A stretch of 63,916 nt of DNA, the filler included, from Reticulomyxa filosa (lineage: Eukaryota > Protista > Foraminifera): assembly GCA_000512085.1 (NCBI GenBank). It is 19 parts of 19 records of this genome, joined end to end, with 100 filler letters (N's around TTAATTAATTAA, not from the genome) between each part and the next. Parts side by side here need not be neighbours in the genome. Positions count along the whole stretch, not along the records: positions 62,609 to 63,916 come from ASPP01035740.1; 18 more parts are not named here. One strand, 5' to 3'. Shown here in pieces: positions 62,609 through 63,916 of this stretch (position 1 is its first letter; each line of letters opens with the position of its first letter). The translations under genes were made by a program, and so were the position numbers. Below the pieces are notes generated by a model. It was not told the DNA's origin, did not search any database, and saw only the letters and a list, made by a program, of their open reading frames with translations.

Positions 62609-63470
62609 TGGAGTTCTGATGGACACAACGGCACTTTGCAAGGCAAGAAGTTACTTTGAGGCCACTCCTGGACGTGTGATTATTTTATCCGACGAACTGC
62701 GATATCTCAAGTGCTAATATCTTTGGTAAAAATCCGATTGACCAAAAACTTGTCAACGCTACCTTCCAATTGAAACCTTTGAAAAAAGATTGATCGTGTG
62801 ATATTTGCAAACGAAAGAGCAATTGATGTCGTCAAATATATTGGTTATCCGTCCTTCGCCGAGGATGAGGCATTCAGCATTGAATTGGACGATTGGTTCA
62901 CAAATACCCATGATAACACAGCAAATGGTGAAATCATTTTTGATACATAACCTAGGACACGTCATATTTGCACGACGATATGAAGATTGAAGATATTCCT
63001 GCAATTCGTGCTATCATTGAATCAGATATTGAATATGACGCCGTAATGATGTTTTGTTTTTTAATATTTTTTTTTAAAAAAATATGTATAAAAAAAAAAA
63101 AGATGAATTGAAGTAAAAAAAAAACACTTATGTTATATAACATTTTTAAAAAAAAGTAACTTAGCGAATTGGAACAACAAATGCAAGCGTTGAGACAACA
63201 GAAAGATGAAATAGAAACACTATTGAAAGGTGAACTAGTTGAAATAGAAAGCAGCAACACTCGCAAGTCAAAGTGCTACAACGAAAAAAAGATAAATATA
63301 TCACCGCTACCACCGGCGCCTAGCTCAATGACACCCTTTGTTGGCCAGCTACATGTGTCGCAAAAATTTGGTCAAAAATCAAGAGTCGAAACGGGTAATC
63401 AAAAGGTGAATTGAAATATGGTGGAATACAAGAATTATATTATGGACCATGCGAACGGAATAGAATAGCT
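62609..63470 (+). pseudogene. Tandem CAP-Gly domain pseudogene
   Basis: WSSDGHNGTLQGKK/YFEATPGR; VVKYIGYPSFAEDEAFSIELDDWFTNTHDNTANGEIIFDT*P; a coiled coil; a third remnant SRVETGNQ/KGELKYGG. Frameshifts and stops throughout. Confidence 0.7.
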
Positions 63471-63487
63471 GCTCCTGAGACTAAAGT

Positions 63488-63832
63488 GACGCCGGAAACG
63501 TCGGGGGGTGGAGGGACTTCGAAAATTTTGGGGTTCAGGAATAATGGACAATGTCCTGGATCCAGATGTTGATATGTTACTTTCAGTAATGTATTAACGG
63601 GTGGTGGAGGGCATTCGTATTTAAGTCGGGCGCTAAATGCCCCGGGAGCATTACCGTATCACTGCGTGATACGGAAAATGCGGGCGGAGGAGGGTATTTA
63701 TTCGTCGATGATGACTATATAGTCTGTGCTAGTTTGTGTCATTAACATGACACAGCTGGCGGGAGGTGGCGGGACTTCGTAATTCAAAACTAGCAGTCAT
63801 GAGCAGCATCATTCCTTTGCTTCAAGTTTTTT
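63488..63832 (+). ncRNA. Putative structured RNA/ssDNA array: 4 x [variable hairpin + CGGGNGGWGGMGGG..TTCG]
   Basis: Motifs at 63502, 63598, 63681 and 63760. Each is abutted by a hairpin closed by a G-C pair using the motif's first C. G-U pairs favour the + strand. A hairpin plus T6 follows the last unit. Confidence 0.5.
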
Positions 63833-63916
63833 GTATTTTATGTTTTATGTGTGATTGTGATATATTTGCATCTTCAGTCCCTGGCTCCAGAATAAAAAAT
63901 TGTTGTTGTTGTGATT

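What the first reader, a model, noticed from the sequence alone, without database searches (positions are those of the whole stretch)
63488..63832. Repeat-spacer array: conserved G-rich motif, each copy abutted by a sequence-variable hairpin (candidate new structured-RNA system)
Seen: four motif copies, CGGGGGGTGGAGGGACTTCG (63502-63521), CGGGTGGTGGAGGGCATTCG (63598-63617), CGGGCGGAGGAGGGTATTTATTCG (63681-63704) and CGGGAGGTGGCGGGACTTCG (63760-63779), with start-to-start periods of 96, 83 and 79 nt. The spacers share no obvious sequence, yet each ends in a hairpin whose closing pair is G with the first C of the motif. These are gacg/cgtc (63488-63502); gttgatatgttac/gtaatgtattaac (63568-63598, 13 bp, 3 G-U); gcattaccgtatcac/gtgatacggaaaatgc (63648-63681); and gctagtttgtgtcat/atgacacagctggc (63728-63760). 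Each internal spacer also holds an upstream hairpin (gggttcagga/tcctggatcc; gggcg/tgccc; gact/agtc). The motif has four G-runs with 1-nt loops, compatible with a two-tier G-quadruplex; alternatively CGGG can pair with TTCG around a GUGGAGGG-like loop. A hairpin plus T6 (63800-63832) ends the array. Inference: conserved architecture without conserved spacer sequence, with G-U pairs working only on the + strand, points to a polycistronic structured RNA (guide-like, protein-binding or processed units of ~80-95 nt) or an ssDNA signal. I recognise no known family. No associated protein gene is visible; the upstream neighbour is a CAP-Gly pseudogene.
Basis: partly seen in the sequence, partly recalled or inferred. 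Interest (0 to 1): 0.8.

Follow-up and report, generated by a model that had tools for sequence, protein, structure and literature searches.

The report
G-box and hairpin repeat array
A small stretch of a Reticulomyxa filosa (foraminifer) contig holds four copies of a 20-base G-rich box, three of them directly preceded by strong hairpins of unrelated sequence. The pattern is real and fits no known RNA, protein or mobile-element family, but it is one tiny locus with no second example, so its function is still a hypothesis.

Summary
The core observation holds. There are four copies of C-GGN-GGN-GGN-GGG-NN-TTCG at the stated coordinates, where about 0 are expected by chance. The spacers share no significant similarity. 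Copies 2-4 are each abutted, with no gap, by a 13-14-bp hairpin more stable than any of 793 background windows of the piece. Two further upstream hairpins are also significant. The 4-bp stem at copy 1 and the closing "hairpin + T6" are at chance level.

The piece is from Reticulomyxa filosa or a close relative. Bases 63055-63335 are 85% identical to contig ASPP01002631.1 (RFI_02715). The plus-strand CAP-Gly/coiled-coil gene copy is dead, and similarity to that related contig stops abruptly at 63335, upstream of the array.

Rfam, ARAGORN, Pfam, an exhaustive HMMER scan and DNA pattern scans found no relative and no second array. The R. filosa assembly itself could not be searched.

The coding reading (Pro4 on minus, Gly4 on plus) has only wobble-like variation and in-frame spacing in its favour. 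The 72-codon open run is not significant.

Best reading, at about 0.35: a non-coding, plus-strand array of single-strand structure modules, each a hairpin stacked on a G-box. Template-switch palindromes, a decayed coding repeat and a mobile-element remnant remain live rivals.

The parts
63502..63521 (+). G-box copy 1 (C-GGN x3-GGG-NN-TTCG). It has no significant hairpin in front of it.
63531..63563 (+). Upstream hairpin of unit 2: 10 bp including 2 G-U, with a 13-nt loop, -12.4 kcal/mol. It pairs on the plus strand only.
63568..63598 (+). Box-abutting hairpin of unit 2: 13-14 bp including 3 G-U. It folds on the plus strand only, and its last base is the first C of box 2.
63598..63617 (+). G-box copy 2
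63626..63645 (+). Upstream hairpin of unit 3: G+C-rich, 6-7 bp with one bulge.
63648..63681 (+). Box-abutting hairpin of unit 3: 5 + 9 bp, with a perfect 9-bp core at 63654-63674. It is a symmetric palindrome whose last base is the first C of box 3.
63681..63704 (+). G-box copy 3, with 4 extra bases before TTCG. It is out of frame with the other three copies.
63713..63724 (+). Perfect 12-nt palindrome that forms the weak upstream stem of unit 4. It is not significant on its own.
63728..63760 (+). Box-abutting hairpin of unit 4: 5 + 9 bp, with 2 G-U and one bulged T. Its last base is the first C of box 4.
63760..63779 (+). G-box copy 4, the last of the array
63055..63335 (+). Context: an AT-rich intron plus an exon remnant of a coiled-coil gene copy, 85% identical to R. 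filosa contig ASPP01002631.1 (RFI_02715). The exon carries TAA at 63157-63159, a 1-nt deletion at 63251/63252 and TAG at 63321-63323. Similarity ends at 63335.
62783..62947 (+). Context: a CAP-Gly-like remnant. The Pfam match is weak and below the curated cut-off.

Best explanation
The array is non-coding and lineage-specific. It consists of four 79-96-nt modules that act, or once acted, as single-stranded nucleic acid on the plus strand, most probably as RNA made in the sense direction of the dead CAP-Gly/coiled-coil host gene copy, in its downstream or possibly intronic part. Each full module is an A/U-rich linker, a first hairpin, and a second 13-14-bp hairpin whose closing G-C pair sits directly on a 20-nt G-rich box.

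Proposed mechanism (inferred, not shown): the box is the only sequence-specific element. It serves as a common recognition site for a G-tract-binding protein or a processing activity, either single-stranded or as a two-tier G-quadruplex stacked on the hairpin. The hairpins have no constraint on sequence and serve to present and insulate the boxes. The array would then offer several equivalent sites on one transcript.

Shown here: the motif recurrence, the placement and stability of the hairpins, the unrelated spacers, the strand bias, and the absence of any known family. Inferred: transcription, protein binding or processing, and G-quadruplex formation.
For: - The motif occurs four times where about 0 are expected.
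- Three box-abutting hairpins are each more stable than every one of 793 background windows of the piece. The L001 minima are -10.0 (plus) and -11.9 (minus); hairpins 3 and 4 (-16.3, -16.6) are far beyond them, but hairpin 2 (-10.9) is only about at that extreme.
- Five significant stems lie within 300 nt, while the other ~900 nt of the piece has none apart from an A/T-run palindrome.
- The spacers are unalignable while the box stays 75-87% identical. That pattern is what selection on the box and on structure, but not on spacer sequence, would give.
- The stems hold 7 G-U and 0 A-C oppositions. Unit 2 folds with z = -3.8 on the plus strand against -0.6 on the minus.
- The plus strand is the sense strand of the only recognisable gene on the piece.
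- With quadruplex-aware folding, units 2-4 adopt one common layout of hairpin A, hairpin B and quadruplex with a 0-1-nt gap; unit 1, which lacks both hairpins, shows only the quadruplex.
- The coding alternative has no ORF support (P = 0.5) and no homologue among 1.84 billion protein representatives.
Against: - This is a single locus of only four units, and no second array was found in anything searchable.
- There are no expression data.
- Covariation cannot be tested, because the hairpins are not alignable with one another.
- Hairpins 3 and 4 are near-perfect DNA palindromes with 3-4-nt loops that fold equally on both strands. That is as typical of a mutational origin as of RNA structure.
- Copy 1 lacks a hairpin, and copy 3 carries a 4-nt insertion inside the box.
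- The variable box positions sit at every third base, and copies 1, 2 and 4 are in frame, as coding repeats would be.
- The host gene copy is dead, so continued transcription is uncertain.
- The two-tier quadruplex energy comes from a model and is generous.
Confidence: 0.35

Rival explanations
1. The hairpins are mutational palindromes and have no function. They were created at the DNA level by short template-switch events during replication or repair, perhaps promoted by the adjacent G-tract, within an old degenerate repeat. They are now decaying neutrally, and the G-T wobble bias reflects strand-biased transitions on the non-template strand.
For: - Hairpins 3 and 4 have perfect 8-9-bp cores with 3-4-nt loops and fold equally on both strands as DNA.
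- Each stem carries 2-3 defects. That is about what the ~15% divergence seen between the neighbouring pseudogene and its paralogue would produce.
- The array region has a strong positive GC skew and T > A, which fits a strand-biased mutation process.
- Template switching is documented to create and apparently 'maintain' perfect stems de novo (PMC8794818, PMC10710096, PMC5453318).
Against: - It needs at least five independent events within 300 nt, three of them ending on exactly the same base of the box. No comparable palindrome occurs in the other ~900 nt of the piece or the 718 nt of the paralogous contig.
- It does not explain why the 20-nt box is conserved while the spacers are randomised.
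- No mechanism is known that places the copied arm flush against the 5' side of a G-tract. This last point is my own reasoning.
Confidence: 0.25
2. The array is the decayed remnant of a protein-coding repeat. On the minus strand it would encode a short proline-rich linear motif ((F/Y)-E-(V/C)-P-P-P-P, resembling ActA/zyxin-type ligands). On the plus strand it would encode G-G-G-G-(T/H)-S. In either case the motif would be separated by fast-evolving disordered spacers, brought next to the CAP-Gly pseudogene by a rearrangement at 63335/63336.
For: - The variable box positions 5, 8 and 11 are exactly the third positions of CCN (minus) or GGN (plus) codons, and position 5 shows all four bases.
- Copies 1, 2 and 4 are in one frame, with spacings of 96 and 162 nt. 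The off-frame copy 3 has a 4-nt insertion.
- An open 72-codon minus-strand run spans copies 1 and 2.
- There is a very weak ActA resemblance (Pfam E = 0.33).
- The same DNA pattern occurs in high-GC prokaryotic genomes, in several of them as regular short-period repeats; whether those repeats are coding was not checked.
- The neighbouring sequence is clearly pseudogenic.
Against: - The 72-codon open run is not unusual for this composition (P = 0.5).
- Both strands have stops and need at least two frameshifts.
- No homologue turned up in the word-indexed 5.8-billion-protein search or in the exhaustive phmmer scan of 1.84 billion representatives. The only hit there is a spurious bacterial low-complexity protein.
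- In-frame spacing alone has a chance probability of about 1 in 9.
- Coding gives no reason for five significant hairpins, three of them flush with the motif.
Confidence: 0.2
3. The sequence from about 63336 onward belongs to an inserted element, such as a non-autonomous transposon or another mobile or viral fragment. Its subterminal region would carry direct repeats of a protein-binding box (a 3-nt-periodic site of the zinc-finger type, or a transposase or Rep site) and palindromes recognised as DNA.
For: - 85% similarity to the paralogous contig is lost abruptly at 63335/63336.
- The array begins about 150 nt beyond that break, a typical distance for subterminal repeat clusters (my own knowledge of CACTA, hAT and Mutator elements).
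- The contig ends 136 nt after the array.
- Two of the hairpins are symmetric DNA palindromes.
Against: - There is no terminal inverted repeat and no target-site duplication. The only flanking inverted match (63468-63478 with 63797-63807, 10 of 11) is at the chance level for this length (my estimate).
- No transposase, Rep or other protein signal is present.
- No related copy was found in viral, metagenome or prokaryotic collections.
- Transposon copies share sequence, whereas the hairpins here are all different.
Confidence: 0.12

Closest known systems
Clusters of hairpin or box cis-elements on one transcript (five iron-responsive elements in the transferrin-receptor 3'UTR; the 19-nt C/U-rich DICE repeats of 15-lipoxygenase mRNA). 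From my own knowledge.
   Same: Several equivalent protein-binding modules lie on one RNA. In the IRE cluster the stems differ in sequence while the structure is kept. In DICE a ~20-nt box is repeated in tandem.
   Different: In IREs the conserved element is the loop and bulge of the hairpin itself, not a flanking box. DICE repeats have no hairpins. No binding protein, transcript or second locus is known here.
Lineage-specific small-RNA families defined by a short shared motif plus a variable stem (Dictyostelium Class I RNAs; the conserved 3'-end motif of Giardia ncRNAs), and polycistronic or intron-hosted snoRNA clusters. From my own knowledge.
   Same: A short conserved box sits next to a stem of free sequence. 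The units are clustered, and they lie in the sense orientation within a host gene.
   Different: There are no C/D or H/ACA boxes and no Rfam match. The stems have no internal pockets. The units abut one another with no room for their own promoters. Expression is unknown.
CRISPR repeat-spacer arrays
   Same: Conserved direct repeats alternate with unique spacers of similar size.
   Different: The genome is eukaryotic. The repeats are only 75-87% identical. Spacer length varies from 55 to 76 nt. The hairpins lie in the spacers rather than the repeats. There are no cas genes and no leader.
Proline-rich EVH1-ligand repeats of the ActA/zyxin type
   Same: The minus-strand translation gives an (F/Y)-E-x-P-P-P-P motif repeated every 27-32 codons with unrelated spacers.
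   Different: The Pfam ActA match has E = 0.33, far below the cut-off. The frame is broken. No homologue exists in 1.84 billion proteins. The hairpins are unexplained by this reading.
Quadruplex-duplex junctions (a G-quadruplex stacked on a hairpin stem). From my own knowledge.
   Same: In units 2-4 the closing pair of the hairpin lies 0-1 nt from the first G-tract.
   Different: Only a two-tier quadruplex is possible, and it is untested. Arrays of such junctions are not, to my knowledge, a described genomic element.
Template-switch-generated hairpins (PMC8794818, PMC10710096)
   Same: These are near-perfect short-loop palindromes of unique sequence in non-coding DNA.
   Different: The described events are scattered. 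They are not phased against a conserved motif three times in a row.

Membership tests
Any Rfam family (snoRNA, ribozyme, snRNA, riboswitch and others) | Covariance-model score at or near the family's gathering threshold | tested here: not met
   There are only two chance-level snoRNA hits (E = 1.6 and 6.2, at 19.8 and 11.1 bits against thresholds of 47 and 45). Both lie outside the array.
tRNA / tmRNA | Cloverleaf detected by ARAGORN | tested here: not met
   0 genes.
C/D or H/ACA snoRNA cluster | C (RUGAUGA) and D (CUGA) boxes with a terminal stem, or a hairpin-H box-hairpin-ACA layout with internal pockets | tested here: not met
   A single C-box-like octamer at 63707-63714 has no D box downstream. 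The stems are continuous and have no pockets. Rfam gives nothing.
CRISPR array | Near-identical 23-55-nt repeats, spacers of uniform length, a prokaryotic or viral setting, and cas genes | tested here: not met
   The repeats are 78-87% identical, and one carries an indel. The spacers are 76, 63 and 55 nt. The flank is a eukaryotic (R. filosa) gene with introns.
Sequence-homogeneous tandem repeat or minisatellite | Head-to-tail units alignable over their whole length | tested here: not met
   TRF finds no array with an ~80-96-nt period. Spacer alignments are no better than shuffles.
Protein-coding Pro-rich (ActA-like) or Gly-rich repeat | An open frame through the repeats that is longer than composition predicts | tested here: not met
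   The longest open run is 72 codons, with P = 0.5 against dinucleotide shuffles. The best minus frame (holding the 72-codon run) has 4 stops and the best plus frame has 3 across 63420-63800.
Protein-coding Pro-rich (ActA-like) or Gly-rich repeat | Homologous proteins or a family-profile match | tested here: not met
   Pfam ActA has E = 0.33, below the cut-off. Searches found nothing. One search returned only a spurious bacterial low-complexity hit.
Protein-coding Pro-rich (ActA-like) or Gly-rich repeat | Codon-phase signature: variation at third positions and in-frame spacing | tested here: inconclusive
   Box positions 5, 8 and 11 vary, and the spacings of 96 and 162 nt are in frame. The same positions would be quadruplex loops or the third bases of zinc-finger triplets, and the in-frame spacing has about a 1 in 9 chance.
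G-quadruplex-forming sequence | Four G-tracts with short loops (the canonical form has at least 3 G per tract) | tested here: inconclusive
   There is no G3+ x4 match. Four G2+ x4 sites exist, and all of them are the boxes. G4Hunter-like scores are 1.9-2.9. The model-based fold places a two-tier quadruplex at each box. Formation was not tested physically.
Transposable element end (MITE or subterminal repeat region) | Terminal inverted repeats, a target-site duplication, and multiple copies in the genome | tested here: inconclusive
   Only a chance-level 10-of-11 inverted match flanks the array. Only one possible end lies on the contig. Copy number could not be measured, because the R. filosa assembly is not in a searchable DNA collection.
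Hairpin-plus-T-run terminator at the array's end | A stem more stable than composition predicts, followed by a T-run | tested here: not met
   Region 63783-63840 folds at -8.5 kcal/mol with z = -1.3, and 22 of 200 shuffles fold as well.

The most novel reading that the evidence does not exclude
Foraminifera may carry a so-far undescribed class of structured RNA modules: a free-sequence hairpin stacked directly on a conserved G-rich box that may form a two-tier quadruplex. These would be arrayed head to tail inside host-gene introns or 3' tails and would serve as processing units or as multivalent binding sites for a G-tract-binding protein. This locus would be its first sighting.
Probability: 0.2. 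Interest if true: 0.8.

Novelty: new variant of a known kind. Interest (0 to 1): 0.45.

Why it matters
Almost nothing is known about non-coding RNAs or cis-regulatory RNA elements in Foraminifera and most other Rhizaria. A module kept as 'conserved box plus structure without sequence' would be a rare handle on RNA-level regulation or processing in this group. It would also be a natural example of phased hairpin-quadruplex junctions.

If the hairpins instead prove to be mutational, the locus would be an unusually clean case of palindromes generated in phase with a G-tract. That would bear on how template switching and G-rich DNA interact.

If it is only a decayed proline-rich repeat, it is ordinary.

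At present the evidence is one four-unit locus on a 1.3-kb contig beside a dead gene, so its value is as a lead rather than a result.

Tried and rejected
- **Known RNA families:** the Rfam scan at a permissive E-value and ARAGORN found nothing in the array.
- **Coding, minus strand:** the 72-aa open run had no word-sharing candidates. An exhaustive phmmer scan gave only P0002, a bacterial Ser/Thr/Gly-rich repeat protein, which I judged spurious. The Pfam ActA match has E = 0.33. The ORF length is not significant.
- **Coding, plus strand:** the 57-aa run had no candidates and no Pfam match.
- **Tiny introns starting at TTC|GT in copies 2-4:** these can reconcile the frames of copies 2-3-4 (32-nt and 19-nt introns). 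They fail for copy 1, and they are far shorter than the 108-148-nt introns of this gene family. Rejected as ad hoc.
- **Spliced-leader or Sm-site reading:** the units differ in the would-be leader and have no room for promoters. Rejected.
- **Apparent compensatory changes and a shared 'PGH' peptide between units, seen by eye:** rejected, because spacer alignments are no better than shuffles and RNAalifold on a MAFFT alignment is meaningless here.
- **Similarity of the array's flanks to the intron or next exon of the paralogous contig:** local and gap-tolerant alignments give only chance-level blocks, so no insertion boundaries can be claimed.
- **Flanking 11-nt inverted repeat as a transposon end:** chance level.
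- **A second instance by DNA pattern:** there were 7 metagenome and 12 prokaryotic-genome hits, all in 59-80% G+C DNA and unrelated. The viral collection gave 0. The piece itself was not returned by the metagenome scan, so R. filosa is not in that collection.
- **Literature:** two of the searches on Reticulomyxa (on hairpins and on small or non-coding RNA) gave nothing relevant.

Full report
**1. What the piece is.** Only 62609-63916 (1308 nt, 38% G+C) is real sequence.

- The plus strand carries the remains of a gene. There is a CAP-Gly-like stretch at 62783-62947 (Pfam PF01302, E = 0.007, below the curated cut-off).
- After an extremely A/T-rich intron comes a coiled-coil exon. An 84-aa translation of that exon finds one relative, 'hypothetical protein RFI_02715, partial [Reticulomyxa filosa]' (54% identity).
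- The contig that encodes RFI_02715 (ASPP01002631.1, L001) aligns to 63055-63335 at 85% nucleotide identity, intron included.
- The piece therefore comes from R. filosa or a very close relative, and this is a paralogous copy.
- The copy is dead. It has TAA in place of the first GAA codon of the exon (63157-63159), a 1-nt deletion at 63251/63252, and TAG in place of GAG at 63321-63323.
- Similarity to the paralogous contig ends abruptly at 63335. Neither local nor gap-tolerant alignment finds anything significant downstream.
- The array thus lies in a segment that this paralogue does not share. It is in the sense orientation and about 150 nt beyond the break.
- A plausible 5' splice site (AAG|GTGAAT at 63406/63407) would put the array in an intron. 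I could not verify this.

**2. The observation.**

- The degenerate pattern C-GGN-GGN-GGN-GGG-NN-TTCG with up to 2 mismatches gives 4 matches against 0.00 expected. The G-core gives 4 against 0.03 expected.
- Copy 3 carries 4 extra bases before TTCG.
- The spacers (76, 63 and 55 nt) are unrelated. No pairwise local alignment beats shuffles (all p > 0.13), TRF does not see a repeat, and MAFFT aligns only the box.
- The hairpins are real for copies 2-4. The 38-nt windows ending on the first C of the box fold at -10.9, -16.3 and -16.6 kcal/mol. The best of 793 plus-strand background windows of the same piece is -9.4. The minima of the paralogous contig are -10.0 (plus) and -11.9 (minus), so hairpin 2 is only about at that extreme while hairpins 3 and 4 are far beyond it.
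- Units 2-4 as wholes have z = -3.8, -2.5 and -2.9. The whole array has z = -3.4 on the plus strand and -2.9 on the minus.
- The upstream hairpins of units 2 and 3 also exceed the background.

**3. Strand.**

- Hairpins 3 and 4 are near-perfect palindromes and fold equally on either strand, as RNA or as DNA.
- The two stems of unit 2 pair only on the plus strand (z = -3.8 against -0.6).
- Over the five significant stems there are 7 G-U pairs and no A-C opposition. This favours a plus-strand single-stranded form.
- The region is also G- and T-rich on that strand. Strand-biased transitions acting on once-perfect palindromes could therefore give the same picture. That alternative is my inference.

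**4. Coding or not.**

- On the minus strand, copies 1, 2 and 4 read F-E-V-P-P-P-P, Y-E-C-P-P-P-P and Y-E-V-P-P-P-P in one frame. On the plus strand they read G-G-G-G-(T/H)-S.
- The variable box positions (5, 8 and 11) are third codon positions in both readings.
The 72-codon open minus-strand run is exactly what dinucleotide shuffles give (mean 74, P = 0.5).
- Every frame has stops, and copy 3 is out of frame.
- Pfam gives only ActA at E = 0.33.
- The word-indexed searches of minus- and plus-strand runs found no candidate.
- The exhaustive phmmer scan of 1.84 billion representatives found one spurious bacterial low-complexity protein.
- The third-base periodicity is equally what quadruplex loops or a zinc-finger-type DNA site would show. 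Two in-frame spacings have about a 1 in 9 chance.
- Coding remains possible as the origin of the box. It has no positive support beyond that, and it explains none of the hairpins.

**5. Known families.**

- Rfam at a permissive threshold and ARAGORN find nothing in the array.
- There is no C/D or H/ACA organisation.
- It is not a CRISPR array: the setting is eukaryotic, the repeats are imperfect, spacer length is irregular, and the hairpins lie in the spacers.
- No transposon ends can be shown.
- Quadruplex-aware folding puts a two-tier quadruplex on every box and gives units 2-4 one layout: hairpin A, hairpin B, and a quadruplex 0-1 nt after the stem. Unit 1 has the quadruplex only.
- Only two-tier quadruplexes are possible, and the energy model is generous.

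**6. Search for a second instance.**

- A two-box DNA pattern found 7 metagenome and 12 prokaryotic-genome loci. All are 59-80% G+C and unrelated; several carry the box as a regular short-period repeat.
- The viral collection gave none.
- The piece itself, which matches the pattern exactly, was not among the metagenome scan's hits. R. filosa is therefore not in that collection, and the genome, viral and annotated-record collections are by description prokaryotic, viral, phage, plasmid or E. coli. The key test, other arrays in the same genome, could not be run.

**7. Weighing.**

- What needs explaining is three things together: a conserved 20-nt box, spacers with no residual similarity, and strong hairpins that end on the same base of the box three times running.
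- Selection on the box and on single-strand structure explains all three at once. I rank it first, as plus-strand RNA at 0.35, because of the G-U bias and the sense orientation in a host gene.
- Its proposed mode of action is inferred by analogy and untested: a multivalent or processed array in which the box is the recognition site and the hairpins present it.
- Template-switch palindromes (PMC8794818, PMC10710096, PMC5453318) explain the perfect cores and short loops. They do not explain the phasing or the conservation of the box (0.25).
- A decayed Pro- or Gly-rich coding repeat explains the box periodicity but not the hairpins (0.2).
- A mobile-element remnant explains the similarity break but lacks any diagnostic feature (0.12).

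**8. Verdict.**

- The pattern is real, statistically solid for three of four units, and fits no known family.
- It is nonetheless a single four-unit locus next to a dead gene on a 1.3-kb contig. There is no second example, no expression evidence and no testable covariation.
- It deserves one cheap follow-up, a search of the R. filosa assembly and RNA-seq, before any stronger claim is made.
- No contig here looks human, and no toxin, effector or virus sequence was involved.

Noticed in passing
window 63055-63335 (with L001 119-413): An intron plus an exon of a coiled-coil gene copy is 85% identical to R. filosa contig ASPP01002631.1 (RFI_02715), and the A/T-rich intron is conserved as well as the exon. 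The exon remnant carries three disabling lesions: TAA at 63157-63159, a 1-nt deletion at 63251/63252, and TAG at 63321-63323.
   Followed up: yes
window 63335/63336: Similarity to the paralogous contig drops from 85% to nothing detectable at one point. This suggests a rearrangement or insertion junction rather than gradual decay. The cause is unknown.
   Followed up: partly
window 62609-62990: There are two CAP-Gly-like remnants on the plus strand. The second (62783-62947) gets only a sub-threshold Pfam match (E = 0.007). The first is split between frames, by inspection.
   Followed up: partly
window 63707-63724: A C-box-like octamer GATGATGA (63707-63714) overlaps a perfect 12-nt palindrome GACTATATAGTC (63713-63724) inside unit 4. 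No D box follows it.
   Followed up: partly
window 63522-63533: An Sm-site-like run of A4-U4-G4 lies directly after box copy 1. The other units have only a loosely A/U-rich stretch at that position.
   Followed up: no
window 63616-63622, 63703-63709, 63778-63784: In copies 2-4 the box ends in TTC followed by GT (GTATTT, GTCGAT, GTAATT), which resembles 5' splice sites. The introns this would imply (19-32 nt) restore a common Gly4 frame for copies 2-4. They are much shorter than the 108-148-nt introns of this gene family, and copy 1 has GA instead.
   Followed up: partly
window 63468-63478 and 63797-63807: An 11-nt inverted match (10 of 11) brackets the whole array. By my estimate it is about what chance gives in a region of this size.
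   Followed up: partly
L017 6252-6459, L019 6624-6831, L011 5449-5533, L020 4136-4280: High-GC bacterial genomes (Amycolatopsis, Acidimicrobiales, Oscillochloris) carry the same (GGN)4 core, in most copies with the TTCG end, as regular repeats with spacings that are multiples of 3 (72/63/72, 21 and 36 nt). These are presumably coding Gly- or Pro-rich repeats and are unrelated to the foraminiferal locus.
   Followed up: no
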